DNA of 64,000 nt, taken from the NCBI RefSeq assembly GCF_963506605.1, contig NC_083281.1, forward strand, positions 26,784,001 through 26,848,000. Reading direction: 5' to 3'. Below are positions 42,536 to 64,000 of this stretch, piece by piece. The position numbers and the translations under genes were made by a program. The notes under the pieces are model-generated. The model made no database searches and had not been told where the DNA came from. It saw only the letters and a program-made list of their open reading frames with translations. The DNA is from Zootoca vivipara. Its lineage: Eukaryota. Position 1 is the first letter of the stretch, and each line of letters begins with the position of its first letter.

Positions 42536-45507
42536 ATGAGCAATGAGAAGCCACCTATTCTCCCATCTGGAGAAGAACCCGCACAAGTGTTCGATCCACT
42601 GATGCCTCCTGCTGGGCCAGCACCACCCATGGATTATGGGGTACCCCCCACGGGCTATGGGGCACCTGCCCCCTTCCAACCCCCATACGCAGTTTATTAT
42701 TCCCCACCTGGTGCAGGGTCCACAGAAGATCCCATCCTTCAGCCACCACAGACCATCACCATCACACCTGTACAACCCTGCAATGAACCCGATCACCTGG
42801 GCTACTCCATCTTTACCATGCTCTGCTGCTGCCTACCCCTTGGTATTGCTGCCTTAGTTTACTCTATACAGGTGAGTGTGCAGGAAAGAAGGAGGGAAGG
42901 AGGGAGGGAAGCAGTGTTATGGGTACAAGGGGATTCCCTCATGATAAAATATCCAGGCCAACAGTTATGCTTTAGTTTTTACTAAATTCAAGCTTGTTTC
43001 TGTTTAGGTGAGTCAGAGCCTTCCATTCCCAGAGGGGGCCAAGCTCCCCACATTGTCCTCAGTCAATTGTCCATTCCTCCGGGGGGGGGGGGTCATTATC
43101 TTTGATTAACCAAGATCCTTACTGAAATTTGCGCACCCTGGAATCTAGTGCAGCCCGATAGTTGATCTACACCTCTTATGACATTATACAATGATGCATT
43201 GTATTATATTTTCCAATCATGCAGAGACAATGCAAAACAGAAGCCAAAGCAAACATTGAGGTAATAATGAAATAATAATAGTAATAGTAATAAAGTTTGC
43301 TATGTTGAACTTATCTGGATAAAGATCTCGAAGTATATGGATTTGATTGTCCTTGTTATACGAGTTCCTAATGAAAAGGCCCATTTTTCAGCAAAGTAAT
43401 CATAGTTCTGTCTGCCTCCTGTCACCCAAATCAGATTACCGGTAGTCCTTTTCACCATCGAGGCTGTGTGCCAGACTTCAATCAGTCGATATTTCAAGGT
43501 CGGCAATTGAATTTCCCCCGAATTATAACCATAAGCCTAACTTATGGGGATGCTTACAAGGGAGCCCAACTCCGTGAGCATGAAAGGAACCCTGGCCGAG
43601 GGGTCCTACTTTGCACCCCAAGTCCCATTTTTAAGATAAAGGAAGGAAGAGGAGGCAGTTGAAGTTGCCCTCCAACAGTGAGCAACTGGACAGCAGACTA
43701 AGCAGGAGTGATGCTTGAGACCCACCTTGGATGCTCCACCCTGGTCATTTTCCTTTTGCCCACGCCCTTCTTTCTCTTGCTGCTGTAGTCGCCCAAAAGT
43801 TGCCTCAAGCAACATCTGGCTGCCTTGAGTCCTTGGGACCCTCCCTGGGAGTGGGGTAGTCAAGGTTTTCTTGGTTGTCAGGAGAAGCCCAAGTCGGTAC
43901 CTTTCTGGGGTCAAATCCAGCAGAGTGAGTTGTGCTGGACCATAGCAGCAAAAAAGGAAAACTCCACCTGCCCTCCTCGGGAGCTGCACAGATCCTGGAC
44001 CAAAGACTTCCCCACCTTAAAGCCTGACTGGCTTATTGTGTGGATGCCACATGAAGGGCCACCATCGCCAGCCTTGTGATGGGGGGCTTTCCCCCCGGAG
44101 TTGTGCAGCTCCCGCAGACGAGAGGGTGTGTGCAAGAAAGCCTGGAGTTGGGATCCAGTCCAGCCTCCTTCAGAGAAGCAGACACGGAGCAATGGATTCA
44201 AGCTACAAGAAAGAAGATTCCACCTAAACATAAAAAAAACATTAGGAAGAACTTCCTGACAGTAAGATCTGTTCGGCAGTGGAATTTGCTACCAAGGAGT
44301 GGGGTGGAGTCTCCTTTTTTGGAGGTCTTTAAGCAGAGGCTTCACAGAATATGTCAAGAATGCTTTGATGGTGTTTCCTGCTTGGCAGGGGGTTGGACTG
44401 GATGGCCCTTGTGGTCTCTTCCAACTCTATGATTCTTTTATTCTAATGGCCCAAGCTGCAGCCTGTCTCTGTCTTTCTCCTGCAACCTCTACGGTGGAAA
44501 TGCTTTGGAACTGAGTGTTCAAAGGCACCCTGGTGGTTCCCTGCAAGGAAGAGCCTTTTGCGGTTGGCTGCTCTGCCCTAACTCCTCTTAAGGGGGCTCT
44601 GATCAAAGGGGGGGGCTCTTGTGGCTGCTGCTCCCCACGCACAGCAGCTTCCAGATTGTGAAGGAAGAGGGGCAGGGCCCACACAGATTCAGCCATGACA
44701 TGAGGGGCATAGCTAGGCAGCAGGTCTAGGCTGACTCCTCAGTTCCTGGTCTTGGGAGCCCTACTGCCATTAGGAGATTGGGTGAGGTGGGGCACAGCCT
44801 CTTGAACAGCACACAAAAAAGTATGCAGGCCCTGGAGTGAGGGGGCAGCTCTGTGGGCTGAAACTCTTGAGAATCATAGAATAATAGAATTGTCAAGTTG
44901 GAAGGAACCCCAAGAGTCCAACCACCTGGAATGCAGAAATCTCAATGAGGTCATACATGACAGGTGGCCACCCAACCTCTACTTAAAAACCTCCAGTGAA
45001 CGAAAGTCCACCACCTCTCGTGGGAGTCCATCCCACCGTCAAACAGCTCTTACTGTTAGCAAGTTTGGTCAGAATCTCCTTTCTTGTAATGTGAAGCCAT
45101 TGGTTCAGGTCCTACCCTCGGGAGCGGGAGAAAACAAGCTGCTTGCTCCATCCTCCAAGCTTGGGCTTGCAAGCTTTAGGACCATTATTGGAAATCCATG
45201 TCTCTCATGGAAGGTGTGGAGATGTTGGAGATGGCGCAGGTATGCCAGGTGAGCATGCGAGGCTGGAGTGCCCTTGTACCCTGTGGACAATAGGCCAGGC
45301 CAGGGAAGAAAGACTATCCAATTCAGCCCAGGCTCCTTCACTTATCTCTCTTCCCAGACCCGGAATGCCAACCTCATGGGAAGGACCATTGTTGCAAAGC
45401 AAAAATCCAGGCGGGCACTGAACTTCGCCCACTCAGCGGTTTGCGTGGGGATCGTATTCATCATTCTGAACATCATCCGACTGGTGGTTTGCCGTGACAA
45501 GTACTGA
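42536..45507 (+). CDS. CD225/dispanin paralogue A (PRRT1/SYNDIG1-like), 161 aa: join(42536-42871,45358-45507)
   Basis: Kozak-like CACCATG; Pro-rich N-terminus; EPDHLGYSIFTMLCCCLPLGIAALVYSIQ|TRNANLMG...SRRALNFAHSAVCVGIVFIILNII; phase-0 GT-AG intron; AATAAA near 45764. Confidence 0.92.
44176..44437 (+). mobile_element. CR1 3' fragment in intron of paralogue A
   Basis: Near-identical to 38097-38400 in the opposite orientation; another minus-strand CR1 at 44870-45155. Confidence 0.85.
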
Positions 45508-46317
45508 AGATAAACTGCATTGTTCATATTTGTAATGCGCCACACTCATGCACACACACACATATTCATGACACACTGCTTTTCAGCCTAATCTACCACG
45601 CAGGGTTGTTGCGGGGATTCATGGGGAGGCCTGGGACAGAAGCACCAGAATGGGGTGGAAGATGCCTTGGACTCCAATGCTGCACCACAGTGGGGTACAA
45701 GACCCTCTTGAGATGCAAATGCCGTAAACTCTGCACTCCCGACATTGAAAGCTTCCAGTGTAGAATAAACCAAACTTCTTAAAGATACTACAGTCTCTGC
45801 TGCATGGCTCACATGGGCGTAGGCAGGCGGGCAGGGGGGGCAGCTGCCCCCCAGAAGCAAAAAATTAATGTATTTTACAAACCATAACCAGCACTTTTCC
45901 CCTCCAAAAACTGAAGTGGAAAGGGCTTTGCTTTAGCGAGGACAGCTCGGTCTCTGCCTGCTGGGGGGGCAGGAACACAGCTGTAACAAAAACACATCAA
46001 ATAAATAAAGCAAAGTGGCTACCGGTAGTTAAGCAGTTAAGACAATGGAGCAGATTGTCCATTGCCTCTCAGGCAAGATTTGATAGCTCACCACTTCACC
46101 CTATTGTTCTTCAGTGGGAGTTGTTAATGAGTATTCAGGGATCTCATTAAGAGTTCTATTGGCGATTTAATGAGGGTGCATTGACTAAGGTGGCTCTGCA
46201 AGGCTAAAAGGAAGTGAATAAGAAAAGGGGGGCTGTAGCTTTGATAGACACAGTGATGTTTATAAAAAGCAGTGGTGTTCCAGTCTGCCCCTTCTCCTGC
46301 ATCTGTACACTGTAAAT

Positions 46318-46658
46318 CAGGGGTGGCCACCTCCCAAGAGACTCTGATCTACTCACAGAGTTAAAAAACTGGGAGTGATCTACCCCCTTTTGGGGGGTTC
46401 AGGTCAAAGCTGTTGAGTTTTTTTTTTTTAAGGAAGGAAGCCCTGTTTTTTTGGGTTTAGGTCAAACTTGTTGAGCTTCTTTTAGGAGGGAGGGAGGACC
46501 ATTTTTGTTTAGGGCTTCAGGTCATAGTTCAGCTTTTTTTAGGGAGGAGGAAAATTTTGGGTGAGCTTTTTTTAGGGGTGCCAGTGATCTAGCAGTGATC
46601 TACCACAGATATCCAGTGATATACTGGTAGATCACAATCTACCTGCTGGGCGTGCCTG
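46318..46658. mobile_element. hAT non-autonomous element (sibling of 37290-37615)
   Basis: TSD CTGTAAAT; AGATCACT/AGTGATCT subterminal repeats. Confidence 0.8.
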
Positions 46659-47499
46659 CTGTAAATCAAGCAGAGAGAAAGCTGCTTACAAGGCTCCTGT
46701 ACAGGTGTACCGGTATCTTCCTCTTGCTGCAGAGTTCTAGCATCACAGCGTCACCCAGAGGCACCCACAAATGTGAGTTATCCCTCTCTCTATTTCTTCC
46801 TTCCTTTCCTCCCTCTTCCATCCTCAATAAAATACTGGGGGGGGGCAGATAAGCCCCACATAGAAAGCCCATCAACTTGGGGGGTTGACTCTTTCAAATA
46901 CGGTATTTACCAGTAATTGGGGGGCACCTAGGCCTCTAGGAGTTGGCTGCTATGCCTAGGAGTAGGACAATTCAAGAAAGCAGAATGATGCATATGCTAT
47001 GGTAATATATCAATAGAATCATAGAATTGTGGTCGGAAGGGACCACAAGGGTCATCTAGTTCAATCCCCTGCAATGCAGGAATTTTTACCTAAGGTGGGG
47101 CTTGAACCCACGACATGGTTGAAATATTATGCTGATATGCAGCAACACCTTGGAGCCGTTGTGACTGCGGCCGTGCCTTGCCTCGCCCTCGCCCGTGCTG
47201 CCACTCCCTCTCGCCTGCCCGACCCTCCCGTCCTCTCCAGCCAAGCCGGGTAGCCGCCGATGCTGCCAGCCCCAGAAGCACAAGGTGGCTGCTGCCGCCG
47301 CCACCACGATGTTGTCGGGCCCACTGGCCCTGTAGCCCCGCCCATGTTCCCACTTCGTGGCCCCGCCCCGCCCCTGAACGACCATGGCTCCCCCCCCCCT
47401 AGTTTTTATCCTGGCTACGCCCCTGATGGCTCAGCATCTGGAACCCCTGATATCTTGCTACCGCCCAGCAGAGTGGGGGGGCGGGGGGGACACAATCTT

Positions 47500-49880
47500 T
47501 GTAGCTATATAAGCTTTGTAAAATTTTCTGTTTTACAATTTAAAGTCCTCATTTCTACATCCTTAAGATAGCAATGACTTCCCTTCTTCTCTTTCCATGG
47601 TTCATTTTACATATCATAAATCCCTGCGTATTTTACAGAAACTATACCATTCAGTATTCCATTATTACGTCCATCATAACTTATTTACGCAGTTGAATTT
47701 ATCTTAGTGCTGCCAGCATTTTCAGCTATACACAGTTATTTCCCATATATTCAATAAAGGTTTTTCAATCTTCTCTAAACATATGTTCTTCTTGTTCTCT
47801 TGTTCTATATGTTAAGCCTGCAGGCTGCGCATATTCTGTCAACTGAAGTTGCCACTCTTCTTTGGTTGGGACCTCACTCGTTTTGGGGCTAATGAAACAC
47901 GGGCCGCAGTAGTGGCATACATGCAAGACATGTTCATTCACTCCAATGAATTCCTAATTCTGCAAATTGACCCATACTTTCCTTTCCTTTTCATATATCT
48001 CAGTGCTGTCCTCCTTCTGCTGCCAGCAAGGTTGTAAGTTCAGCCTTGGTGGAGGATCTTGATGAAAGCTGTTCTTTGGCAGCAGCCAGCTCCCAGCAAG
48101 GGGAGATTTGCCTTCCTCGATAACAGGCTGAATAAATTCCAGCTGCTCAGCTTGAAGCCGTCATTTCGGCAGCAATCGTGCTGCAGGGAAAGGACCTTGG
48201 GGCTGAGGTCTTGGGGGGTGAGGGGGGCAGCTCTATATGACCACCAAGATGCATTATATTGTGGGAATTTGCTTGCAGAAATACGTGTATTAATCCAAAC
48301 AGAATACGGAACTATGTTTCTTGGGAGAAATTCACACTAACTAAAGTATGGGTGAATTTTCATGATGATTTTTTTAAAAAAAAAAATCAAATCAAATCGT
48401 TGCAGAAATGTGGAGAACTGAATTTACGACTGGAAAAATACAGAACCTGGAGAACCAAAATTGACAATTTGCCCATTCCTGGCCAGCATTCGTGCCAACT
48501 CCATTGGGGGCCTGGGTGCTCGAGCACCCACAAAATTCCCCATGAAGGGGCTGGGTACCTACAAATTTTGGTGACAGGGCTATGCACGCTGCATAGCACC
48601 CACGGCCCTGGGCACCCACAGTTGTGGAGCCAAGTTGGCACTCCTACTGGCCAGGACAGAAGCTATCCCTTACTGTGACTCAGGAGACACTGCCTGGGTT
48701 TCCTCCAGGGGGCAGAGCCTTACACTGAACACCTCAAGCATTTACCAGTTTATTTTTATTTATTTCTCCATAATTTTTATTAAATTTTCTATTTTACATT
48801 TTAGAAGATTCATTTTTACATCCTTAAAGTATCAATGACTTCCCTTCTTCTCTTTCCATGGTTCATTTCACATAAAATAAATCCCTGCATATTTTATGTA
48901 AACTAAATCATTGAGTATTCCATTATTATATCCATCAAAACTTATTTACACTGTTGAATTTTTCTTAATGCTGCCCACATTTTCAAATATACACAATTTC
49001 CCCCATAAACATTTTCCAATCTTCTTTAAACATATGTTCTTCTTGTTCTCTTATTCTATATGTTCTATATGTTAGCCAAAATGTGTAAATGAGAAATGTG
49101 ATGAGAAATGTTGTAGGTGCCAAAATGAGACTGGCAGTTATATTCATATTTGGTGGAAATGCAGCAAAATTAAACCCTATTGGTATATGGTCTATAAAGA
49201 AATGAAAAAAATACTTAAAGTATTCCTTCAAAAAGAACCCTGAATTATTTCTCCTTGGGATGCTCCATGATGAAATTCGGCCAAAAGATAGAAATATCGT
49301 AATGTATGCAGCGACAGCAGCTAGGATATTAATTGGGAAAAAATGGAAGAGCAAAAAGATACCGAGCAAAGAGGACTGGCAAATTAAAATATTAATATAT
49401 TATAATTCCGCGACGGAAATGGCAGAAGTTAAAGGGATAAATGAGGTTAGAAGAGATAAAGATTGGGGAAAATTTAGAAATTATTTAGCTACAATGGTGG
49501 AAACGCCTCTCTTGCAGAAGGCATATGAAGACTCAGAAATAAAAGGGTTTTTTTTTCAATTGAGAAAATAAGAAATCAGATATACAGACACATGACAGAA
49601 AATGAAAGGCGCAGGACAAAAATGGCTGGAAGTTTGTAATCACTTAGGGTGGGTGGAGGTGAGGGTGGTGGGATATTGAAAAGAGGTATATTTTGATTTG
49701 ATTTGATGTTATTAGAGGAGATTTTATTTCATTTTTTTTCATTTTTTCTTTTTGTGCGTGTAAAAATTACTTTTTATGTTTTGCTCTTGTTTTGTCTCCA
49801 TTTCTATTTCATCCTTATTTTTTGTTTGTGTTTATATGATTTGTAATGTTTGAAAGTAAACAAATAAAGAATTTAATTTG
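47500..49880. mobile_element. Cluster of L1/Tx1 3' fragments (minus 47500-47920 and 48745-49070; plus 49090-49880)
   Basis: MYAATAARILIGKKWKSKKIPSKEDW motif; the two minus copies are similar to each other. Confidence 0.7.
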
Positions 49881-51194
49881 CACACACAAAAAGAACTTGG
49901 CACCCTGGCGCCCTGCACCACCAGTGTCTATGGGTAAGACGGTCCTGGTTCCAAGTAAATCACATAAAATTCCCTGGCTCAGAAGCCTCTGAAATCTAAA
50001 TAGTGCAAAGGGGTTAAACGGCATCATAGCTGCCAAGTTATCCCTTTTTTAAAGGGATTTTCCCTTATGCTGAATAGGCTTCCTCGCGAGAAAAGGGAAA
50101 ACTTGGCAGCTATGAACGGCATATGGAGGCACATGGGAGTCTGCATTATTTCAAATAGCCCCTGGAAAACAATCTCATTAATCTAATTGGCTTCATTAAG
50201 ACAGAGCTGAAACAGTGGAGGTAACTGAACATAATGTGGCGTGCAAATATGCTCCCTTAAAATGGTCGCATGGCCAGGGTTCCTGTTTTATTTTCTATCT
50301 CTACTAGTGAATCAGCAAAAGCTTTCAGATTATTTCCTAAGGAATCCTAAAAGAGCTTGGATCATTTCAGGTATGCTTCAAATGGTGCTGGATTACCCAA
50401 TAAACAGATTAAACACATGCTCAGGACAGCAGCAAAATAAGGGCAACCCCATTTGGGGGGAAAAGAATTTGACATTTGTTATTTCAGAAAAAGTAGTCAT
50501 CATTTTCTGATGTTGATGATTAATAACTTTCATCAGAACACTCTTTTCCTCACCTGGGGGGGGGGGGAACCCTCAGAGAGCAACCATGTTTTCCGTACTC
50601 TGTATGGAATCAGACATGTTTCGTCAGGTGACTTCAATGAACTTATCCAGAATTTGGAAATCAGAAAACTGAGAAAAAAGAAGATATTTTAATTGTAGCA
50701 TACATGTACGTTTTGTGTCATTTCAAAAAAAGCTTTTTTATTTTAGGTTTTAGGTTTTATTTTGGATTACCTATCTGCAGGGGGCACTATAATCTCTTCA
50801 ATGCTGAGAAGCTCTCAAACTCTTAATCCAGCTCTGGCTTCAAAATGCAGTATCTCGGGAATGTTTAAACCACTCCTGATCTCCAGTTGCATAGCAAAGC
50901 AGCCCAGCCGTAAAGCAGCTTGTTTATGTCTTACTTTAACCATCATATTAAAGTAAATACAGGCCTTCAGAAGCAATAAATCCTGCATGCTACATGCTGG
51001 AGGGAGCCATTTCGATGGGTTATATAAACACAGTCGCACAGTATCACAAACAATCTTTATTTACATTTCTACCTACTCTTTGACATCAGCACTGTTGGCC
51101 AAGACTCTTTTTATGCATTAACTTTTTGGTTTTTTTAAAGCATGGGAGATCTGATCAGAGAAAAGACCGTAACTCAGTGGCAGAGCATCTGCAT

Positions 51195-52219
51195 TAGGGT
51201 GATGACTTTTTTACAACCTCATTTCCCTGTATCATAATTTGATGAGCTTTCATTAACAATTAGATTAAATCCTACTTTCAAAGAGATTTGATTTTTTTAA
51301 AAAACCTCACGCACAACATGATTTAAAAAAAATTATTTATCAGTTTTTTGACCATTTTTGAAGTCACTGTAAGCAGATATAAAATTGAACCCAAGCTTTA
51401 AAGGTTAAGGTAAAGGTAAAGGGACCCCTGACCATTAGGTCCAGTCGTGACCGACTCTGGGGTTGCGCGCTCATCTCGCATTATTGGCCGAGGGAGCCGG
51501 CGTACAGCTTCCAGGTCATGTGGCCAGCATGACAAAGCCGCTTCTGAAGAACCAGAGCAGCGCACGGAAATGCCGTTTACCTTCCCGGTGTAGCGGTTCC
51601 TATTTATCTACTTGCATTTTGACGTGCTTTCGAACTGCTAGGTTGGCAGGAGCTGGGACCAAGCAACGGGAGCTCACCCCATCACAGGGATTCGAACCGC
51701 CGACCTTCTGATCAGCAAGTCCTAGGCTCAGTGGTTTAATATAAAATTGAACCCAAGCTTTAGAGACACATATATACAACATTATATAGGGCCATCAAAC
51801 ACACAAGGAAGCTTTTTTTAGCTGCGGTAACAGTATAGACGCCGCTAGAGGACAATGTTTTGCTACCTCTCCTTTTCCCAGCATGCCCGGCAGGGTCTGC
51901 TGGCTGAGTTTTGAGGTCCCCAAAAGAGGCTTTTACTTTGCGCAGGTGTGACATTTGTATACCCTATGTTGCTAAGAACACTCCCCATTGTGCAATGTGG
52001 TGTTGTGTCCAAATTTGATACGATATATATATAGAATTGTTAATACAATTTTATGAAATGGTAAAACGGCATACAAAAAAATTAAAAACGGTTTGTGTGT
52101 AACCTTTTTTAATATTTCAATGGAATATACCTCATTTTAGTCATTAATAGGCAAAAGTTCATCCATTTGTGCTACAGGAAATAATTCTGGAGAAAAAAAG
52201 TGAAAAAGTCACCACCCTA
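51195..52219. mobile_element. hAT element (TAGGGTG..CACCCTA) carrying a nested Sauria SINE
   Basis: 8-bp TSD ATCTGCAT (51187-51194, 52220-52227). Confidence 0.8.
51401..51737 (-). mobile_element. Sauria SINE
   Basis: Flanked by a direct repeat of about 24 bp, ATATAAAATTGAACCCAAGCTTTA. Confidence 0.9.
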
Positions 52220-54354
52220 ATCTGCATACATGCAGAAGAGCCCAGTTTTAACCCCCATCATCTTCAGGTAAGGCTGGGACAGAACCCTGCCTGACACCTT
52301 AGAGAATCACTGCCAATCAGTGACTGAGCTAGATGGATCAATGGTCATATTTGGAATAAGTCATCTACTGCCACCTAGTGAGGGTCTCCCTGCATTCTGC
52401 CCTACCAGTTCCATTGGACAGCAGCCACCAAAGGTTGTATTTGGGGGGGGGGCTTTTCACAGGACTTTTCCCTTGATCCTGTAGCCCGAGACCTCCGTGT
52501 TCAATCCAAAAGTCATGACTGCAGGGAGATAAGGGGGGGGAACGCAACTAGGAACAGACTGCTGGTTAATGACCCTGAATATAATGTCACCGAATTTGTG
52601 GAAAACAAGTTTCATTATAGCTATGATAAGAAGTTTCCTGTTGCATCACACCTATTGCATCAGACAGCTGTCCAGCACAAGGCTTTCTTCCCAGAAGTGT
52701 TGCTCAGAAGCTTCTGGGACAGGAAAGGGGAATTTTTGTCCCTTGGTTTGTTGTTGAACCCCAACTCTCCTCATCTCTGATAAGAGGTGGAATCCAAAAC
52801 CAACTGGAGGACCACCAGAGATTTCCCATCCCTTCTTCTAGAAGGTCACAAGCAGGATATAAAGACAAATCCCATCGCTCACTGTTGCCCCCACTGCAAT
52901 TGGTCTTCTAAGATATTGTGCCCCTAAGCATGGAGGTTCCTTGTTGCCATTGCTGCTAATTTATGTCTGTCTGCTTACATTGATTTATAATTGCTTTGCC
53001 CAGTTCTTCAGCCAAAAACAGCTCCCAGAGCAGCTCACAGGTAAATTTCATAAAAGCCAAACAAAGCAATCTCAGCCCTCAGGCTTACGATCTAAAAGGC
53101 ACAAAAGGAAAAGGAATGGGGAGGGAGGAGGAAAACTCAGCATTAGTTCTCGAAAGCTCTCCAGGTATCCTTTTATTTATATACTGCAATCTCTGGGTGG
53201 TTCACGACAACAAAACGTAAAGCAATACAATTCGATCATTAAAATGCCTGGCTAGTCAGAAAAAAAAGGAAAAAGCTTCAAGCAGCCACATAGACCTGTC
53301 AGCATAAAATAACAAAAGTATCCAAAGGAAAACTGAAATCAAAAGTGAGGATGCCTGCTGAATCTTTGCTGGAAGAAGGTCCCACATCATAGGACCGGCA
53401 GCCCCAAATCTCTGACCTCTGGTTTAACAATCAGTCCCTTTCCCGGGGGAAACAGAGCTGGCCCAAGACATTTTGGAACCTAAGGCAAACTGCAAAAACG
53501 GGAGGAGGGGGGGGATGAAGATCTGCACCAGGAACAAGGGAAGGAATCAAATCAACATTGAGAAGGGTTAGGGGTGAAGGAACAAAGGGGTGGGACTGGG
53601 GGGATACCAGCAGCAGCTCCTATTTGCCAAGAGGCTGGTGGGGAGGCAACATTGGGGAGGGACTGCTGAGGAGGCAGCAGGCCAGGCCGACCCTGTCAGG
53701 GGGAATTGTAGGAGCCAACTCCTAAGGGCCAAAATCCCTTTGCCCCCCCCCCAAAAAAAATTTGAGGGGGCCACCCCCTCCCAAAGTTGAAGGGAATTCC
53801 CATTCAAATGGTGGGTGGGTGCCACGACATGTGATTGATTATGTGAGTGGGACTTACCTGCCCCCCCTATTTTATTCAAGTTGGCACCCCTGCTGGGAAT
53901 TGTAGCTCTGGGAGGGGAGAATCAGTCTCCAAAGAACTCTCGACGCCCTTAACAAACTGGGGGGGGGGCCCTTTGGGAGAAAACAATGACTGTTTAAAGT
54001 GGTATAATAGTGCTTTATATGTACAGTATAGTGTGACTGTGACCCAAGTTTCTCATTTCTCCAAACTTAAGTTCAGTTCTCCATATTTCTGCAGCAATTT
54101 GTAGTTTCTTTTTTTCAAAACCTCATATATATTCATTTCAGTGTTAATTTTTCTCAATGAACACATTTTGATTAATGCACATATTTCTGCAAGCAATTTT
54201 CCCCCATTGTATAATACAGTTTTGTATATTATTTTCACTGAAACAATGCGTCTTTAGGCACCTCTCACCCTAATGTATGGATATTGTTTGGCTGGAGAAC
54301 TGCTTTGCAAAATCTGGAGAAGTGTATATTGGTTTGGGAAGTACAGTTTAGGTA

Positions 54355-55420
54355 GGGCCAACCCAAAATTAAAAATTGGAAATCAAGTAATAATTTGGCA
54401 AAATTGGATGAAAAAGGGTATTTTGACATTGAATCAGTTAATTGATGAAAATAACAAATTTATAGAATATAAGACTTTGCAAGTAAAATATGGATTAGCT
54501 AGTGAAACACAAATGGCAAAGTCAAACATACGTTGGAAAGGCAGTTTGGCCCTGACGCTATAGCAGCATCAGAAACACCCATGCTGCTACAAGATTTAAT
54601 CTCTGCAATAAAAACAAAAAACCCTACACTTGCATTATATAAAACCTTACTCAACAGGAAGAAATATGATTTAGAATATGATAGACAAAAATGGAGTGAA
54701 GAGTTAGGGGTACAGATAACAAATGATATATGGGAGTCAAGTATAAAATCAACAGAAATAGTCTCTATGGATCTAAGACTAAGACTTATTCAACAGAAAA
54801 TAATATTCAGAGTCCACTGGACTCCAGCAAAATTATACAAGAAGAAAATAACAAGTGTAGATAACTGCTGGAGGTGTGGGAGTGAAAATGCTGTGAACTT
54901 AGTACCGTATATATGTTGATCATTCTGGTGCGAGGTGAGAATATTTATAGAAAGAGTAATAAAAAGAAATTGTTATCTAAGGGAACTGAATTTAATTCTA
55001 AATTATATTCCGGAAACGTGGGAGATTTCAAGGGGTCAAAAAAAAATAATGGATGTACTGTGCTATATTAGAAGCAAAAAAACTTGTTTTGGTGAGTTGG
55101 AAGAGCCGCAAAAAGATTCCATTGAGCACATGGATTGATAATATGGACAGATTAGCTACATACGAATGAATTGCATGTCAACGCAAAATAAGAATGGATA
55201 AATATGAAGAAATCTGGAACAAATATTTAAGTGATAAGGCAGATAGCGGTGGGAAGTGGGGGAAGGAGAGAGAGGTGGGAAAATATTGTTAAAGGGTCAG
55301 AGGTATATATCAGCATGCTTAAATCTGAAATGTCAAAGTGTGTTGTTGTGGTTTTTGTTGTATGTGTTTTTTGCAGTTGTTGTTTGTGTTGAAGAAATGA
55401 TTAAATAAATAGAATTTTAA
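54355..55420 (+). mobile_element. L1/Tx1 ORF2 C-terminal fragment
   Basis: QKWSEELG..W..RLIQQKIIFRVHWTP..CWRCG zinc-knuckle region; flanking AAGTACAGTTTAGGTAG repeat. Confidence 0.8.
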
Positions 55421-55934
55421 AAAGTACAGTTTAGGTAGTTCTGCATAAAAATGCAAAGAAAAATTAATTTATCTTCTATTCCTAGGGAAGGATAAGGGGA
55501 TATCAAATGCTCGCTGGCATTCTTACATTCGGTATCAATCAGCTGGGGTTATTCATTATCTAATTCCTCGTTCCAAACACCCACACATTTTGCAGGGTGG
55601 GAGGGAGGACCACGGTGCACAGTTCTTTCGTCCAAGGGCAGAGCATTGCACACAGCTACCCTAAAGCAGAGAGCCAAGCAGATCAGCCTAGGTTATAGAG
55701 CAAGGACTCTTCTGAAAGAATATTCAGATCGGTGGGTCTGGTACCACTACAGGAGGAGGGGAAAGGAGGGGAAAGGGCTGGAGGTGCAACCGACTGAGGA
55801 GAGACGGGGTCTGCAGGTCACACAACAGCTCATCCACACAACCCAAGAAGCAGGGATATCGAGAGAAAAGGAAGAGAGACTTCACTGGCAGAACAGCAAG
55901 CCAGGGGAGAAAGGAGGAGAGGCAGACCTGCACC

Positions 55935-57505
55935 ATGAGTGGCATCAAATATGAGAGGATGAACGAATATGCTCTGGACATGGACAATCCACCACCCTAC
56001 TCTGAAAAGAATGAGGAGCCTGGTCCTTCTCCTTGGATGGCACCCACCACGGGCAGCAGAGAAACTCCCGCTGTGCCACACCAGTACACCCCTTACTATG
56101 GTCCAGCCAGCACAGCACAAACTACGCAAACCATCGTCATCAGTTCCATGCAGGCCAGCCGTGAACCAGACTACCTGGCGTATTCCATCTTCACCATGCT
56201 CTGCTGTTGCCTCCCCTTGGGTGTTGCTGCCCTTGCGTACTCGATACAGGTGAGTGGGAGCTGAGTGAGTGTTTGAGACAGGAGAGGGAGACCTTAAAGG
56301 GCTGGGTCATTGGCCTGTGCTGACATCTAAGGCCCTATCTGCATTATACACTTAAAACAGTATCATACCACTTTAAACAGTTGTGGTTTCCCCCTCCCCC
56401 AAAGAATCCTGGGGACTGTAACTTCTTAAGGGTGCTAAGCAGTGCTGTTTTTCAAGAAAAAGAGGTGCCGGAACTCACCACGAATGCCTCCCTTGTTCTC
56501 TTATGATGGCAATGGCGCCCACCTGGGGGGGGGACAGGGACCCTGGTGCTGAGAGTTGTTAAGAGTCCCCTAGATAGAGCTAAAACAGGGCCTTAGCTAC
56601 AGGGGAGCTAGCCAGGTATTTTGCCCTGTATGAACCCTCAAGGGGGAAGCCCCGGCCCAGTTTTCCTCTGAGACAATCTAGGCTACTCAGAGAAAAACTG
56701 GGTGGGGGCTTCCCCCTCAAGTGCGTGGCGCTGTGGGTTAAACCACAGAGCCTAGGGCTTGCCAATCAGAAGGTCGGCGGTTCGAATCCCCGCAACGGGG
56801 TGAGCTCCTGTTGCTCGGTCCCTGCTCCTGCCAACCTAGCAATTTGAAAGTACGTCAAAGTGCAAGTAGATAAATAGGTACCACTGCGGCGGGAGGGTAA
56901 ACGGCATTTCTGTGTGCTGCTCTGGTTCGCCAGAAGCGGCTTAGTCATGCTGGCCACATGACCCGGAAGCTGTAGACTGGCTCCCTCAGTCAGTAAAGCG
57001 AGATGAGCACCGCAACCCCAGAGTCGTCCGCAACTGGACCTAATGGTCAGGGTCCCTTTACCTTTACCTTTACCGCATGTTACGACTGGACTAGATGATC
57101 ATCTGGAACCTCCTGTCAAACAGCAAGGAGAATTGAACCTCTGCCTTATATCTTTGGTTCAGGAGATGGTTCTTGCCATGATGTTACAGTGGTCAGTTAT
57201 GCCCCTGCAGACTGGGGCAAGTTACCACTTTGTACATGGATGTCTGATTTCACCCTATGCCACACACATTCGGGAAAAGGTAAGGGGTCAGTGTGCTCTT
57301 CCCCGATCCAGTTTCTTCTCTTTCTCCCCAGACCCAAAATGCCAACAATAATGGAAACCACATAAGCGCTCGACGAAACTCCAGGCTGGCACTCATATTG
57401 GCTCACACGGCACTCGGAGTGGGTCTTGGGTGCCTGATTATATACATCATCTTCTGGATGAATATTTCTCACCAGATAATTGAAGTGCCAACCATCAGCC
57501 CCTGA
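55935..57505 (+). CDS. CD225/dispanin paralogue B, 162 aa: join(55935-56249,57332-57505)
   Basis: EPDYLAYSIFTMLCCCLPLGVAALAYSIQ|TQNANNNG...SRLALILAHTALGVGLGCLIIYIIF; same intron position as A; AATAAA near 58053. Confidence 0.92.
56722..57073 (+). mobile_element. Sauria SINE in intron of paralogue B
   Basis: Full head, core and (ACCTTT)n tail. Confidence 0.9.
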
Positions 57506-58857
57506 GGATGCACAATGTTCATATGCTAAAAGACCTTCCCTGCCCAAGATGCCCAAGTCTGAGAAGTCCTCCTAAATTGACGTCGTGCTCTTTGAATCGT
57601 TCTGTAAAGCGGCACGCTCTGAGCTGGCTCGGACGCATGTGCATCATGTCGCTTCTATGCCCTTGTTCCAACTAGGGATAGATTTACAATATCAAGCGAT
57701 GAACATCATGTGTGAGCCAACTCTGTGATACCCAAAGATCTCAAACTCCTTCCAGGAGTATCTCTCCCCTTTCTCATTCTCCCACCCAGAGTTATTTCGA
57801 GAGTCCTCTGGTCTTGCCCTGTTCCTCTTGACTGCTGACCATTCTCCCAACATTTCACAGATAATAATTGGGACATGCATATAACACAACTGTTGTCAGA
57901 GGTCAAATTTCAACCCAAGCCCTGTCCTTGACACCCACCCCATTCCTCATTGTCCTACTTCTTTGGTCTTGTTTATCCTGCGAGAACTTATCCCATGTGT
58001 TTTTAATGCAAAGAAGGCATTTGTGAGATGCTTAGAGAGCCATCTGAGGCAAAATAAATAAAATATACACTGAGATCACCATGATTATGTGTTGTGCAAT
58101 GTCTTCACAAAACTGCTATTGGTTCCACATAGAGAAAGGAAAGTGGGATAAATGATAAATGGCCATTATCTGTCACATGCAGCTCTTTCTCCATTCTGCT
58201 GCAGTTCACCTTCTGCCCCAAACTGTGTTATTCTAGGGTTGTTATATCTTGAAGAGCAAAAAAGAGGACAGCCTGAGCCAGGGAAAAAGGTAGGTGGGTG
58301 CACCTCTTTCCCCAGCTCAGACTGGCAGCGGCCATGGCATGCAGAGCACCCATGTGCTTCTTTCCCAGGCTCAGACTGGCAGCCCAAGCCGCCCAAGCCC
58401 AAGCCACTGCCAAAAAAACAAAACAAAAATCCCGAACATTTCCTTTAAAATGTAAAAATCCACCCTGATGGGCATGTTGGCCCTCCAAAAGAGGACGTGT
58501 CTGTGTTTTCCCAGACGTATGGCAACCCTAGTTATTCGTCTTACTGTCCACTGTGGTGAAATTACATGAATTACTTACGTTACATTGTCATTGCATCATT
58601 CCACCCCATTCATTTTGATGCAAAGGAAACACAATGCAAATGGGGGTGGGTGGGGAGAGGGGATGTAATTTGTAGATCGAAAGCAGCAGCAACAGTGAAC
58701 ACTGACTTTTCCTGCTGGAGTGGCTTCCATTGCAGATATGGGGGCGAATGAGCCAACATTGGCCATCTCAGTTCTCGTTTCTGTTTTCATCAGAATTCCC
58801 TGACATGCCTAATCATGACACCTTCATGGCAGATTCACTGACTTCAGCTGTGAAGGT

Positions 58858-59095
58858 AGAACAAAGCCATCATGCCTAGCAGCTTTTGATAGCCCTCTCC
58901 TCCATGAAATTGTCTAGTCCTCTTCTTTAAAGCCGTCTAAGTCTGTGGCCATTCCTGCCTCCTGGGGGACCAAGTTCCATAGTTTGACTAGGCACTGCAT
59001 GAAGAAGTACATTCTGTTATCTCTCCTAAATGATCCAACTTTCAACTTTATTGGAGATCCATGAGTTCTAGTGCTATGGGAGAGGAAGAAACCCC
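58858..59095 (-). mobile_element. Old CR1 3' fragment
   Basis: TRTHGSPIKLKVGSFRRDNRMYFFMQCLVKLWNLVP. Confidence 0.7.
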
Positions 59096-59809
59096 ACAAA
59101 CTGCAACGACTGTCCTTCTGGACTGTCCTTATTCCAGGAGGGGGTTCCATCAATCACATAGCAGCAGTTTTGGTGCTCTTCTGCAATGAACCCACTTCTC
59201 CCAATAATCAGACTTTTTGCAATACAGGAAGAAATGAGGCAATGCACTGCAACTTCATCTAACCTTTCGCCATTCAAATAAAAGCATGCACCATATAAAT
59301 GTTCCATTAGCAGCTGATGACATCAACGTCTCCCTGCAATTGTTGTGCAAATATATGAGGGTGAATGGTGCAATAAACAGGTCATCTAGAAAAGCAGCAG
59401 TGGTCAAGGGTCCCAGCAGAGTCTCCGTCTCCAGTGTCCCAGAACCTCCCGAACAGCATGGAGGGGGTTTGTTTTTTGAGCACTGAAAAGAGCTCTTTTC
59501 CACCATTTATGTTGATTATAACCAATCAGAATGGAAATAGGTGAGTTAGGATTGGCTTCCAGGGTCACTCTGGAGAAGGTGTGTGGGAAGAAGAATTTAA
59601 GGGACACTGAAAACACAAGGTGCTAAAACCTTTCCAGTCAGAGCAGAAATAATGGGAGTGTGGGGGCAGGGAGAGGTCTCTCACTTTCATGTATTTCCTA
59701 GCCCATCGAAAGCAATCCTATGGGTGGTTTTACCTTCCCTCTGGATGAAATGGGGGTGGGGGCGGGGAAAAGAGAGATCAGCTTTCAGAATGTTGCAAAA
59801 AGTGAGGAG

Positions 59810-60800
59810 GGATGTGTCGGAGGGATGAGTGAGCCGCTTGACACGTGCACTGCTGTGATCTGAATTAAGATCGTGCAACACGCCGATCTCCCTGGGGCTG
59901 TCTCGGGAGCGAGGTGGTGAGTGAGTGCATTGCTGTGCACGTGCTTATGTGCTCTTCTTATGCGAATGTATAGATGCGCAGCGCACCCATTTCCACATGC
60001 GTTGCAAACCGATCTGTCTCCAGTTTCTGTGAGCCTCTCCTCCAGTTGGCTGCTCATCCTCCCTCTCCTCCCGTCCCCACCGCTCCCAAGTGCGGGGTGG
60101 TAGAAATGGCTAGGAAAGAGTGGACGTTTCTGCGCCTTTCCCCACTTTCTCCCTCCGTCCCCCTTGCCCGCTCCTGCTGCGCTTTTGCGCCAAGCGGTAA
60201 AGGCCAGCGGGGTAGTCATTTATGCAACTAACCTAGGGATGTCCCTAGTTCTCCTTCGCAACCCTACATGCCCACTCTTGTTTCTCCCCATCCTTGCCCA
60301 GCTTCTCTTCCTGGGCTCCAGCGACAGCAAGCCACGGGGGGGGGGGGGGAGCACAAGTCCCGCATCCACGGCTTCCCCCCTCTCTCTCTCGCTCACACAC
60401 CCCGCCGTGGCGCCGGCAGGAACTGGGAGCGCAGCAGCGGGTGTCGTCTGTTCAGGCTCCGGCTCTGCAAAGACGACGTGGCGGACTCGGATAACATTGG
60501 ACTCCGCCACCTCCCATTTCCAAACTTTGGGAAGAAGGCGTAAGCTTCTGGCATGGTCCTAAAGCCGTCCGGTCTCCTTCCCAAGGCCTCCCTTACCTGG
60601 ATTTGAAAAGGCTCCCCCCTGGCTCAGCGCCCAGTTCGTGTCGCACTGCCCTAAATCCGTACTTACTAAAGGCTTATCCACACTCTGGAAAACCAAACCG
60701 CAAAGCATGGAAAATCCGAGTTGACCGAGCGCTAAAGTTTGGGGGGGGCGCACTCCAATGTGAAGATTTGAAAAGAGCTAGGAAAAAGTTAGGTGCGAGT
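59810..60800. promoter_or_regulatory. CpG island between paralogues B and C
   Basis: Dense CpGs and high GC in an otherwise CpG-depleted background; no TE hallmarks recognised. Confidence 0.6.
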
Positions 60801-61878
60801 GAGCCCTAAGACAGTATGGGCTACAGGAGCAGCCATCATGGCTACATTCCCTCCAACAGTCCCAGCTCCAGCACCGGCTTTAGGGCGCTGCAGACAGCTT
60901 CCCTGAGTTGGGATCCTTGCTTTGGGTTTTGTACCATATGGATCTAAGAATGTCTATAGTGGAAAATGAGATCTGAGTTGGCACTCTGTCAAGTATGGGA
61001 TAACGTTTTCACCATGCAACGTCTTCTGATCTCCTAACAAGCGGGATGAGTGATTACTTAATAAACAGCTGCTGTCATCTTAATTTCCCCCATAAACTTT
61101 GTGCAAACAAATCAGGATGGGTGGCCAATAAGCGAGTCAGCTGGAAGCAACCTTTATCTGTTTCTCAAAAGGCAATCTGTCCTTTGTTTGCTGAAACCTG
61201 GGCTACAACCCGTTCCCAGTCAGGAGTACTTGGAGACAGGATTGGTGGGCAGAGAGAGATTTCCTAGCCATTCGAAAAACTACTCCTTGGGAGTGACCAG
61301 CCAGTCTCCAAAACGAAAGGAAGGTTTTTGGCAATTCTGCCAGGACTACTAAAGCAATTTCCAGCACCAGGCCTGGTTCCAGCAACCAATTTTTGCCTCA
61401 ATTTCTGACTTTGCAATAACATAAAATATGGAAGCATGTGCCCATTTGCACCTTTGAAATGGTGCGGGGTGTGCTCTGTGTGTGTGCATGCGTGCCTATT
61501 CAGCCACACAGAAAATATGGGGAAAGTGAAGGCCACACTCAGTTTTAATCTGACTGCTTTGGGTTACCAATTTCCTCGTTCCTAGCCTCTCGTACTTCTG
61601 GGATGGAAGACCCGGTGGAGCTGCTGTTATATTCTCCCACAGCTAGAGCCCTGACTAGGGGTCACTTGAGAGAGCAGCCGGCAATGTAAAGCTAGCTCCC
61701 AGGCAAAAAAAAGACTGATTTTTTGTAGAAAGAGGAGGGGGGCTGGAGGAGTGGCCAAGGGGAGGAAGCGTAGAGCGCCAGCAGCTAATCACAGACAGCT
61801 GAGGAGGAACAGAGTGAAAGACTTTAGAGGCTGCGTTCAGGGAACACCAAAAAGGAAAAGGAGAGCAGGCCGTTCACC

Positions 61879-62223
61879 ATGAGCAACTACGAGAAGCTGA
61901 AAGAGGACCCCATCACTCAGGATCCACCTCCTTACTCTGACAAAGACTCACAACCAACTAAAGACCCTAAGCCAACTAAATCTCTTTCTGGATCAGAACC
62001 CCATTGCATGGGCTGGCCCTCTAACCCTGTGCCATCCCAGTACCAACATTATGTTGCAGCTGGTACAGGATCCCACCAAGTTTCGATCCTTCAACCTCCG
62101 CAGGCCACCATCATCATTCGTGGTCCACCTGCCAATGAGCCTGATTACTTGGCCTACTCTATCTGTACCATGCTTTGCTGCTGCCTCCCCCTAGGCATTG
62201 CTGCCTTGGTTTACTCTATCAAG
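61879..62223 (+). CDS. CD225/dispanin paralogue C, exon 1 (115 aa; exon 2 beyond window)
   Basis: EPDYLAYSICTMLCCCLPLGIAALVYSIK|GTAAGT, same phase-0 donor as A and B. Confidence 0.9.
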
Positions 62224-63083: not shown

Positions 63084-64000
63084 ACAGTGGTACCTTGGTT
63101 GTCGAACTTAATCCATTCCGGAAGTCCACTGGACTCCCAGAACTGTTCAAAAACCAAGGTGCGGCTTCCTGCACTCAATACCGTGTTTCTCATATTTTAA
63201 GGCATCCCCAAAAAATAAGCCATGACAGGATTTCTAAGGGTTGGTGAAAAATAAGACATACCCCGAAAATAAGCCATGTCGTGTAGCCCCGACCGAGCGA
63301 GAGGCGAAGGCGCGGGACCCAGCAGGAGCTCCCTGCCTGCTTCCCCGAGCCGTCGCGCATCGGGGGACAGAGCCGAAGATCGGCGGGCGCTCCTTGCTGG
63401 GCTTGACAAGCCCGGCAAACAGCGCCCGCCGATCTTCGGACCTGTCCTGTGTGACAGGCGGGGGTGGGGGGGGAAGCGGAGATCGTTCTCCGCTCTCCCC
63501 CCACCCCCGCCTGTCACCGAAGATCGGCGGGCGCTGTTTGCTGGGCTTGACAAGCCCGGCAAACAGCGCCCGCCGATCTTCGGCCCTGTGCTGTGTGACA
63601 GGCGGGGGTGGGGGGGAAGCGGAGATCGTTCTCCGCTCTCCCCCCACCCCCGCCTGTCACCGAAGATCGGCGGGCGCTCCTTGCTGGGCTTGACAAGCCC
63701 GGCAAACAGCGCCCGCCGATCTTCGGACCTGTCCTGTGTGACAGGCGGGGGTGGGGGGGAAGCGGAGATCGTTCTCCGCTCTCCCCCCACCCCCGCCTGT
63801 CACCAAAGATCGGCGGGCGCTGTTTGCTGGGCTTGACAAGCCCGGCAAACAGCGCCCTCCGACCTGTGCTGTGTGACAGGCGGGGGTGGGGGAGAAGCGG
63901 AGATCGTTCTCCGCTCTCCCCCCATCCCCGCCTGTCACCGAAGATCGGCGAGCGCTCCTAGCTGGGCTTGACAAGCCCGGCAAACAGCGCCCGCCGACCT
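63084..64000. mobile_element. Tigger-like MITE end with a nested TA-flanked element containing a GC-rich tandem array
   Basis: TA-CAGTGGTACCTTGGTT at 63082; TA-CCGTGTTTCTC at 63179; array from 63373. Confidence 0.6.
63373..64000. repeat. Tandem array of about 143 bp; each unit contains two palindromes
   Basis: Unit starts 63373, 63517, 63660, 63803, 63938. Confidence 0.95.

What the first reader, a model, noticed from the sequence alone, without database searches (positions are those of the whole stretch)
42536..62223. Tandem array of three or more CD225/dispanin genes: a candidate second IFITM-like cluster
Seen: three same-strand genes with the same intron position and a near-invariant core EPD(H/Y)L(G/A)YSI(F/C)TMLCCCLPLG(I/V)AAL(V/A)YSI(Q/K), but strongly diverged Pro/Tyr-rich N-termini and C-tails. 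The array may continue past the window. Known: CD225 proteins regulate membrane fusion. IFITMs block viral entry and occur in tandem clusters, whereas PRRT1, PRRT2, SYNDIG1 and TRARG1 are single-copy trafficking regulators. The core (TMLCCCLPLG; exon 2 T.NAN..G...A...SR.AL..AH.A..VG) does not match mammalian IFITM or PRRT1/SYNDIG1 (CCFWP) closely. Inference: a subfamily with no clear mammalian member that expanded locally, a pattern typical of host-defence genes.
Basis: partly seen in the sequence, partly recalled or inferred. Interest (0 to 1): 0.78.

Follow-up and report, generated by a model that had tools for sequence, protein, structure and literature searches.

The report
Lizard tandem array of dispanin genes
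Three neighbouring lizard genes encode small two-span membrane proteins of the CD225/dispanin family; they belong to an old, poorly named branch seen here in fishes, amphibians, turtles and squamates, and nothing found here shows that they are interferon-driven antiviral genes.

Summary
The + strand carries three CD225/dispanin genes. Genes A (42536-45507) and B (55935-57505) are complete two-exon genes. Gene C has only exon 1 (61879-62223) in the window. All three share the phase-0 intron that is conserved across dispanins.

A and B are already annotated in Zootoca vivipara as 'SYNDIG1-like'. Spliced contigs show that B is transcribed.

The genes belong to a large subfamily with a very conserved core. 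It occurs in a shark, teleosts, amphibians, turtles and squamates, under at least nine inconsistent database names. No mammal, bird or crocodilian appeared in any list I could read. However, I obtained no mammalian anchor sequences, so the subfamily assignment stays open (IFITM side, or PRRT1B/PMIS2 kin).

The squamate copies come from old duplications. B's lineage is shared with an amphisbaenian, a monitor, iguanians and a snake, and synonymous sites between the paralogues are near saturation. The core is under strong purifying selection.

Evidence against an IFITM-like defence role:
- No ISRE lies near any 5' end.
- The second glycine of the IFITM3/PRRT2 GxxxG motif is absent.

Nearly all members carry a PPxY motif in the N-terminus. 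Gene A has lost it.

Most likely these are palmitoylated trafficking or fusion regulators.

The parts
42536..42871 (+). Gene A, exon 1 CDS (112 codons): Pro-rich N-terminus without PPxY, first hydrophobic segment with CCC
   Evidence: ATG and GT donor read. PF04505 43.2 bits. 100% identical to residues 1-112 of P0032, Zootoca vivipara 'SYNDIG1-like'.
45358..45507 (+). Gene A, exon 2 CDS (49 codons + TGA): loop and second transmembrane segment
   Evidence: AG acceptor and stop read. PF04505 profile 31-67 at 21.8 bits. Matches the rest of P0032.
55620..58079 (+). Gene B transcript span as seen in assembled contigs of two runs (two exons, one intron)
   Evidence: contigs cover 55620-56246 and 57329-58079 (X1), and 55952-56246 joined to 57329-58044 (X2). 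The joint skips 1082 bases, GT..AG with cut +3, which places it at 56249|57332.
55935..56249 (+). Gene B, exon 1 CDS (105 codons): YxxPhi (YERM), PPPY, first hydrophobic segment with CCC
   Evidence: PF04505 40.5 bits. 104 of 105 residues identical to P0046.
57332..57505 (+). Gene B, exon 2 CDS (57 codons + TGA)
   Evidence: PF04505 profile 31-68 at 26.1 bits. 100% identical to P0046 residues 105-162.
58053..58062 (+). AATAAATAAA polyadenylation signal of gene B
   Evidence: Read. Contigs end at 58044 and 58079.
61879..62223 (+). Gene C, exon 1 CDS (115 codons): YEKL, PPPY, first hydrophobic segment with CCC. Exon 2 lies outside the window.
   Evidence: PF04505 41.9 bits. Best hits are Lacerta agilis P0001 (87%) and Podarcis muralis P0002 and P0003. 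No exon-2 match downstream.

Best explanation
The array consists of paralogues from one old dispanin (CD225) subfamily. This subfamily has kept an almost ancestral core (DYLxYSIFTMLCCCLPLGIAALVYSIxTRxAN..G). It is seen here in a shark, teleosts, amphibians, turtles and squamates, and it duplicated in tandem within squamates.

Shown:
- Each gene encodes a protein of about 160 aa. It has a Pro/Tyr-rich N-terminal domain, a first hydrophobic segment with three cysteines, a short conserved loop, a second transmembrane segment and a short variable tail.
- The intron lies in the loop.
- Gene B is transcribed and spliced.
- The core is under purifying selection.

Inferred from what is known of other CD225 proteins (IFITM3, PRRT2, PRRT1, TRARG1):
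- The N-terminus faces the cytosol.
- The cysteines are S-palmitoylated.
- The PPxY motif recruits NEDD4-type ubiquitin ligases.
- The N-terminal YxxPhi motif recruits AP-2.
- The proteins therefore cycle between the plasma membrane and endosomes, where they tune membrane fusion or the trafficking of partner proteins.
- The paralogues differ mainly in the N-terminal sorting code and the C-tail. This suggests subfunctionalisation by location or partner. Gene A lost both PPxY and the YxxPhi tyrosine and evolved fast, so it probably stays at a different membrane.

Nothing tested here marks the genes as interferon-stimulated.
For: - Family membership: PF04505 hits by exon; two hydrophobic segments per protein; conserved loop intron (PMC3282796 passages).
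- Identity: A equals Zootoca P0032, and B equals P0046 except for one residue.
- Breadth of the subfamily: 80 hits; 1161 hits at E<=0.1; 66 clusters at E<=1e-30 and 1501 at E<=1e-10.
- Taxa of the 26 organism-labelled clusters among the 30 I looked up: 4 teleost, 1 shark, 6 salamander, 4 frog, 1 turtle, 3 squamate, 1 amphioxus, 6 other invertebrate.
- Old duplications: the B lineage groups with Rhineura (100/99), and then with Varanus, Phrynosoma, Anolis and Erythrolamprus (97/82). C groups with Rhineura (100/99). Turtles fall outside the squamate copies. Paralogue dS is 0.7 to saturated.
- Purifying selection: dN/dS of about 0.07-0.11 on the 28 CD225 codons of exon 1.
- Motifs: PPxY in 132 of 138 family N-termini; the six exceptions include A and its Podarcis orthologue.
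- Expression and structure of B.
Against: - No experiment bears on function.
- Topology, palmitoylation and motif use are inferred by analogy.
- The tissue of expression is unknown because run labels are coded. One raw RNA run showed only low depth and another none.
- A YxxPhi motif within the first 16 residues occurs in only 40 of 138 members.
- Subfamily placement relative to mammalian dispanins is unresolved, because no mammalian sequences could be fetched.
- Physical adjacency of the copies in other species was inferred only from shared contig lengths and neighbouring locus tags, not from the DNA itself.
Confidence: 0.6

Rival explanations
1. The array is a second, IFITM-like antiviral cluster. 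The proteins are interferon-induced restriction factors that stiffen membranes and block virus fusion, and the tandem expansion reflects an arms race.
For: - The two-coding-exon gene structure is the DSPA/DSPB type (PMC3282796 passages).
- There is a Cys cluster next to the first hydrophobic segment, and PPxY plus YxxPhi in B and C, as I recall for IFITM3.
- Frog and fish proteins that sources call 'dispanin subfamily A member 2b-like' or IFITM-like score close to the family profile.
- There are lineage-specific duplications in geckos and in Podarcis, and fast evolution of A.
- N-terminal flanks show dN/dS up to 0.88.
Against: - No ISRE core lies within 1.5 kb of any ATG. The nearest matches are 47983-49810, and the window total of 8 is not above chance (mean 4.56).
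- Only one GAS-like site was found, 43 bp before C's ATG.
- A second Gly of the GxxxG motif is present in only 5 of 138 members. The motif is needed for IFITM3 oligomerisation and entry restriction (PMC7665892 passages).
- The orthogroups are old and stable and the core is strongly constrained.
- Published IFITM inventories count three IFITMs of 120-135 aa in the anole, at other loci (PMC3499546 and PMC3424830 passages).
Confidence: 0.15
2. The genes are co-orthologues of a named mammalian dispanin, either PRRT1B (DSPD2) or the sperm protein PMIS2. The subfamily would then have a mammalian member, and its function would follow that gene.
For: NCBI names without '-like' are used for members of this family: PRRT1B for Pogona vitticeps and Chanos chanos, and PMIS2 for Tiliqua, Vipera latastei and Ahaetulla. 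From recall, such names follow NCBI's computed orthology. PMIS2 is a two-exon CD225 gene (PMC3395656 passages).
Against: - The two names fall on near relatives in one part of the tree (Tiliqua P0011 and Pogona P0020 lie close to lacertid gene D). At least one of the names therefore cannot be simple orthology.
- At least nine different names are used across the family.
- A search limited to proteins of 246 aa or more with a typical family core found 9 proteins among 283 candidates, none mammalian. PRRT1B's length of about 263 aa is recalled.
- PMC3282796 calls DSPD2 mammal-specific.
- Mollusc, annelid and urchin proteins score 90-110 bits on the family profile, whereas the PRRT1 chain held in the PDB scores 38.8 bits.
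Confidence: 0.15
3. The genes are neuronal PRRT1-like trafficking regulators, like the pufferfish prrt1l gene, whose knockout shortens the circadian period.
For: [quoted passage not shown] PRRT1 is the only solved relative found (E 1e-8).
Against: I could not check that the puffer prrt1l sequence belongs to this subfamily. The preprint targets a first, second and third exon, whereas the lizard genes have two exons. One fish paralogue says little about four squamate paralogues.
Confidence: 0.1

Closest known systems
IFITM1/2/3 (dispanin subfamily A)
   Same: CD225 domain, two coding exons with the loop intron, a Cys cluster at the first hydrophobic segment, PPxY and YxxPhi in the N-terminus of B and C, and a tandem arrangement.
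   Different: The N-terminus is longer and Pro-rich (161-162 aa against the 120-135 aa reported for lizard IFITMs). No ISRE was found. The second glycine of GxxxG is missing. The locus is different from the published IFITM clusters. The core motif is CCCLPLG. The IFITM3 motif details are recalled.
Non-human DSPA clades Dspa4, Dspa5 and Dspa6 of Sallman Almen et al. 2012 (PMC3282796)
   Same: They are described as dispanins with no clear human orthologue, and Dspa4a-f expanded in Xenopus. Frog proteins named 'DSPA2b-like' score high on this family's profile.
   Different: I could not match sequences to those names, because the paper's Table S1 is a closed supplement. Lizards were not in that study.
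PRRT1/SynDIG4 (DSPD1) and SYNDIG1/TMEM91 (DSPC)
   Same: Pro-rich N-terminus with PPPY, and the CD225 domain. PRRT1 is the only solved structure matched (9zks_M, E 1.1e-8). Many database names for the family point here.
   Different: Those genes have an extra N-terminal coding exon, whereas the lizard genes have two exons. PRRT1 has CCFWPTG where this family has CCCLPLG. It scores only 38.8 bits.
PRRT1B and PMIS2
   Same: NCBI gives these names to some squamate and fish members. PMIS2 is a two-exon CD225 protein.
   Different: Orthology was not tested, because no sequences were available to me. The naming is inconsistent within a single clade.

Membership tests
CD225/dispanin (PF04505) | Match to the Pfam CD225 profile above the gathering score | tested here: met
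   Exon 1 peptides score 43.2, 40.5 and 41.9 bits against a cut-off of 27.1 (profile 3-30). Exon 2 peptides continue at profile 31-68 with 21.8 and 26.1 bits, below the cut-off when taken alone. Exons were scanned separately.
CD225/dispanin (PF04505) | Two hydrophobic segments with a short loop, and cysteines in the first segment | tested here: met
   Two Kyte-Doolittle segments in A, B, D and C's Lacerta orthologue. CCC is present in all three exon 1 copies.
CD225/dispanin (PF04505) | Conserved splice site in the loop between the two segments | tested here: met
   Phase-0 GT/AG intron after YSI(Q/K) in A, B and C. Confirmed by spliced contigs for B. The feature is stated in PMC3282796.
IFITM / DSPA | Only two coding exons (DSPA and DSPB), with no separate N-terminal exon | tested here: met
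   In A, B and C the ATG and the first hydrophobic segment lie in one exon. B's transcript has two exons in total.
IFITM / DSPA | Interferon-stimulated response element at the promoter | tested here: not met
   No GAAANNGAAA within 1.5 kb upstream of any ATG, including about 1.2 kb upstream of B's 5' end at 55620. This is a consensus scan only. Induction itself was not tested.
IFITM / DSPA | GxxxG motif in the loop (G91/G95 of IFITM3) | tested here: not met
   The first G is kept in 133 of 138 members. The +4 position is G in only 5 of 138 and is V, S and V in A, B and C's orthologue. The motif's role comes from PMC7665892. The column match to IFITM3 rests on my recall of its sequence.
IFITM / DSPA | Position in the conserved IFITM loci | tested here: inconclusive
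IFITM / DSPA | Restriction of virus entry | not testable with these tools
   This needs cell assays.
PRRT1 / SYNDIG1 / TMEM91 (DSPD1, DSPC) | Additional exon coding the N-terminus | tested here: not met
   The genes have two exons. The feature is stated in PMC3282796.
PRRT1B or PMIS2 orthologue | Reciprocal closest relative and shared flanking genes | not tested
   No mammalian sequences or flanks could be fetched. The long-protein search found no mammal.

The most novel reading that the evidence does not exclude
An ancient dispanin subfamily was lost or changed beyond easy recognition in mammals and archosaurs, and was multiplied in squamates into a set of membrane-fusion regulators with different sorting codes. 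Gene A, stripped of PPxY and the YxxPhi tyrosine, would act at the cell surface, and B, C and D in endosomes. Together they would serve as a constitutive, interferon-independent barrier to enveloped viruses, parallel to the canonical IFITMs.
Probability: 0.12. Interest if true: 0.6.

Novelty: new member of a known kind. Interest (0 to 1): 0.33.

Why it matters
CD225 proteins control membrane fusion in antiviral defence, synaptic release and glucose-transporter traffic. How the shared domain does this is still debated.

This subfamily keeps a near-ancestral domain. Invertebrate relatives score far higher on its profile than the PRRT1 chain held in the PDB does. It exists as several old paralogues that differ mainly in their sorting motifs, which makes it a natural series for asking what the N-terminal code does.

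In practical terms, the family carries at least nine contradictory database names, so a proper phylogeny and a single name would prevent wrong functional transfer. As a genome feature, however, it is an ordinary annotated gene cluster.

Tried and rejected
- Further copies or pseudogenes in the window: none (tblastn). A Pro-rich ORF at 47260-47571 gave only E 0.2-0.5 and was dropped.
- NCBIfam: nothing relevant.
- Rfam on 42000-64000: nothing.
- ESM Atlas: only generic CD225 clusters, no help with placement.
- PDB: only PRRT1.
- Mammalian anchors for a full dispanin tree: three routes failed.
  - The best 120 were all squamates, turtles and teleosts (9 of the 120 rows carry no name).
  - The best 150 carry no names, and I could name only 30, which I chose by eye as the most divergent-looking. 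They are not a random sample.
  - A search with a 448-aa fish model, used to shift the length window, found no mammal.
  The statement 'no mammal or bird seen' is therefore limited to these lists. Of the 1161 and 6671 hits, most were never shown to me.
- Orthologue dN/dS: not possible, because the coding DNA of other lacertids could not be fetched. Only paralogue comparisons were made.
- Tissue of expression: run labels are coded.
- Literature searches: CD225+PRRT1B+PMIS2 (one paper with two or more of the terms), PRRT1B (11 papers, gene lists only by title and abstract), prrt1l (one preprint), annotation names.
- Closed supplements: Table S1 of PMC3282796 and Fig. S5 of the preprint could decide the subfamily.

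Full report
**What is there**

The window is lizard DNA. Gene A's two exons translate exactly to the two parts of P0032, a Zootoca vivipara protein. Gene B's translate to P0046 of the same species with one residue different.

Motif scans of all six frames found the core EPD[HY]L...CCCLPLG three times, at 42785, 56163 and 62137, all on the + strand. The matching second-exon motif T.NAN..G occurs twice, at 45358 and 57332.

Reading the DNA gives these models:
- Gene A: ATG at 42536, exon 1 to 42871, then GTGAGT. Acceptor AG, then exon 2 from 45358 to the TGA at 45505-45507.
- Gene B: ATG at 55935, exon 1 to 56249, then GTGAGT. Exon 2 from 57332 to the TGA at 57503-57505.
- Gene C: ATG at 61879, exon 1 to 62223, then GTAAGT.

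All three introns are phase 0 and lie after YSI(Q/K). C's second exon is not in the remaining 1.8 kb, which ends in a 143-bp tandem repeat. A tblastn search with 12 family proteins found no other copy or remnant in the 64 kb.

I scanned the exons separately, and did not join them. Full-length comparisons used the stored database proteins.

**Family**

Each exon 1 peptide passes Pfam CD225 (PF04505) on its own, at 40.5-43.2 bits against a cut-off of 27.1, on profile positions 3-30. The exon 2 peptides continue at positions 31-68.

Each protein has two hydrophobic segments and a triple cysteine in the first. The intron sits at the splice site that Sallman Almen et al. describe as conserved in eukaryotic dispanins (PMC3282796, passages read).

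The same paper states that DSPA (IFITM) and DSPB genes have only these two coding exons. DSPC and DSPD1 (SYNDIG1, TMEM91, PRRT1) have an extra N-terminal exon. The lizard genes are of the two-exon type.

**Expression**

Contigs assembled from two public runs of the same organism label, from two studies, join 56249 to 57332. Together they cover about 55620 to 58079. That end lies just after an AATAAATAAA at 58053-58062.

The service only guesses that these runs are RNA, but a precisely spliced form argues for it. Of two raw RNA-seq runs, one showed low depth on both exons, on the strand expected for a + strand gene. The other showed none.

Sample labels are coded, so the tissue is unknown.

**The wider family**

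C's exon 1 found 80 proteins. A profile of 17 members found 1161 proteins at E<=0.1, of which the best 120 were shown. Nine of the 120 rows carry no name, and the rest are squamates, turtles or teleosts.

The names given by the sources are inconsistent:
- TMEM91-like
- PRRT1-like
- SYNDIG1-like
- TRARG1-like or TUSC5 homolog
- PRRT1B and PRRT1B-like
- PMIS2
- IFITM-like
- 'dispanin subfamily A member 2b-like'
- CYSTM1-like
- several others that are clearly wrong

A full HMMER search of 1.84 billion cluster representatives gave 6671 hits at E<=1e-3, 1501 at E<=1e-10 and 66 at E<=1e-30. I could put names on 30 of the best 150. I picked these because they looked most divergent. Twenty-six had an organism:
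- 4 teleosts
- 1 shark
- 6 salamanders
- 4 frogs
- 1 turtle cluster
- 3 squamates
- 1 amphioxus
- 6 other invertebrates (limpets, an annelid, an urchin)

No mammal, bird or crocodilian appeared in any list. A further search was restricted by query length to proteins of 246 aa or more. It found 9 proteins among 283 candidates, none mammalian.

On the same profile, the PRRT1 chain held in the PDB (9zks_M) scores 38.8 bits, while invertebrate proteins score 90-110 bits. The family therefore keeps a near-ancestral CD225 domain, and mammals have no close, slowly evolving counterpart in what I could see.

I could not obtain mammalian IFITM, PRRT1B or PMIS2 sequences from any tool. The placement among the published subfamilies is therefore open. 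PMC3282796 mentions DSPA clades (Dspa4-6) without clear human orthologues and a Xenopus expansion. Frog 'DSPA2b-like' proteins score high here. The paper's Table S1, which would allow a match, is a closed supplement.

**History of the array**

I built a maximum-likelihood tree of 83 rows: squamates, turtles, two salamanders, a caecilian and two teleosts. C was represented by its exon 1 only. I left out isoforms, fragments and unnamed rows. The careful IQ-TREE run had rough bootstraps.

The tree gives four lacertid lineages:
- A groups with Podarcis muralis P0047 (100/100) on a long stem of 0.61.
- B groups with Podarcis lilfordi (100/97), then Rhineura (100/99), then Varanus, Phrynosoma, Anolis and a snake (97/82).
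- C groups with Lacerta and two Podarcis copies, then Rhineura (100/99).
- D is a fourth Zootoca protein, P0096, which is not in the window. It groups with two Podarcis copies (100/100).

Geckos form their own multi-copy clade (94/83). The sampled turtles form one clade with one sequence per species (99/97).

The expansion therefore took place within squamates, but much of it is old. It continued in single lineages.

Between A, B and C, synonymous divergence is 0.7 to saturated. The 28 CD225 codons of exon 1 have dN of 0.065-0.10, giving dN/dS of about 0.1. The 16 codons before them have dN/dS of 0.26-0.88. Exon 2 of A against B is about 0.4. The near-identical core is thus kept by selection, not by recent duplication or gene conversion.

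In many squamates several members sit on one contig or carry neighbouring locus tags. Examples are Phrynosoma JD844_005674, 005675 and 005679; Naja E2320_000581 and 000583; and three members on a 690-kb Varanus contig.

**Tests of the host-defence idea**

- No ISRE core (GAAANNGAAA) lies within 1.5 kb upstream of any of the three ATGs. For B, that range includes about 1.2 kb upstream of the mapped 5' end. The window's 8 matches are not more than chance (mean 4.56), and the nearest lie at 47983-49810.
- One GAS-like site lies 43 bp before C's ATG.
- The GxxxG motif of the loop is needed for IFITM3 oligomerisation and entry restriction, with G95 playing the main role, and is shared with PRRT2 (PMC7665892, passages read). 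Here it is reduced to its first glycine. The +4 residue is G in only 5 of 138 members and is V, S and V in A, B and C's orthologue. The column match to IFITM3 rests on recall.
- Published inventories count three IFITMs of 120-135 aa in the anole, in the conserved IFITM loci. This family was not among them.

None of this excludes an antiviral role, but nothing supports one.

**Sorting motifs**

PPxY occurs in the N-terminal part of 132 of 138 members. B has YERM and PPPY. C has YEKL and PPPY. A and its Podarcis orthologue have neither and are two of the six PPxY exceptions.

The PRRT1 chain in the PDB also shows PPPY, so the motif is not specific to IFITMs.

**Reading**

The array is an annotated but misnamed set of old paralogues of a non-mammalian dispanin subfamily. 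By analogy with studied CD225 proteins, they are probably palmitoylated two-segment membrane proteins. Their cytosolic N-terminus would set their trafficking through NEDD4-type ligases and AP-2, and their conserved domain would tune membrane fusion or partner trafficking.

A preprint reports that knockout of a pufferfish 'prrt1l' gene shortens the circadian period. If that gene is a member, which I could not check, at least one member has a neuronal role.

Noticed in passing
window 56684-57111 (intron of gene B) and 51600-51782: A tRNA-like SINE. The copy in B's intron collects very deep read and contig cover from many loci (word depths of 10,000-40,000). A second copy lies in reverse orientation between A and B (18-base motif, 2 matches against 0 expected). 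ARAGORN calls no tRNA there.
   Followed up: partly
window 63373-63997: A GC-rich tandem repeat with a 143-bp unit and at least 4.4 copies at 93% match. It runs to the end of the window, inside what should be gene C's intron.
   Followed up: partly
window 33400-34638 (- strand) and 54273-55138 (+ strand): A 412-aa reverse-transcriptase-like ORF of a LINE, and LINE-tail ORFs directly upstream of gene B's 5' end. The 24 kb between the NCAM-family gene and gene A looks like repeats only.
   Followed up: no
P0096 (Zootoca vivipara, 163 aa; not in the window): A fourth family member of the same species, orthologous to Podarcis P0010 and P0136. In its N-terminus the YxxPhi tyrosine is replaced by cysteine (NCEQL). 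Its genomic position relative to the array is unknown.
   Followed up: partly
window 61879-62223: No Zootoca protein identical to gene C's exon 1 appeared among proteins of 63-201 aa (best hit Lacerta agilis, 87%). Gene C may be unannotated, or modelled differently, in this species.
   Followed up: partly
window 56179 region (gene B, codon for the residue after DYL): The window encodes Ala where the database protein P0046 has Val, probably an allelic difference. Run X1 also differs at a synonymous site, 56168, and at several UTR sites.
   Followed up: no
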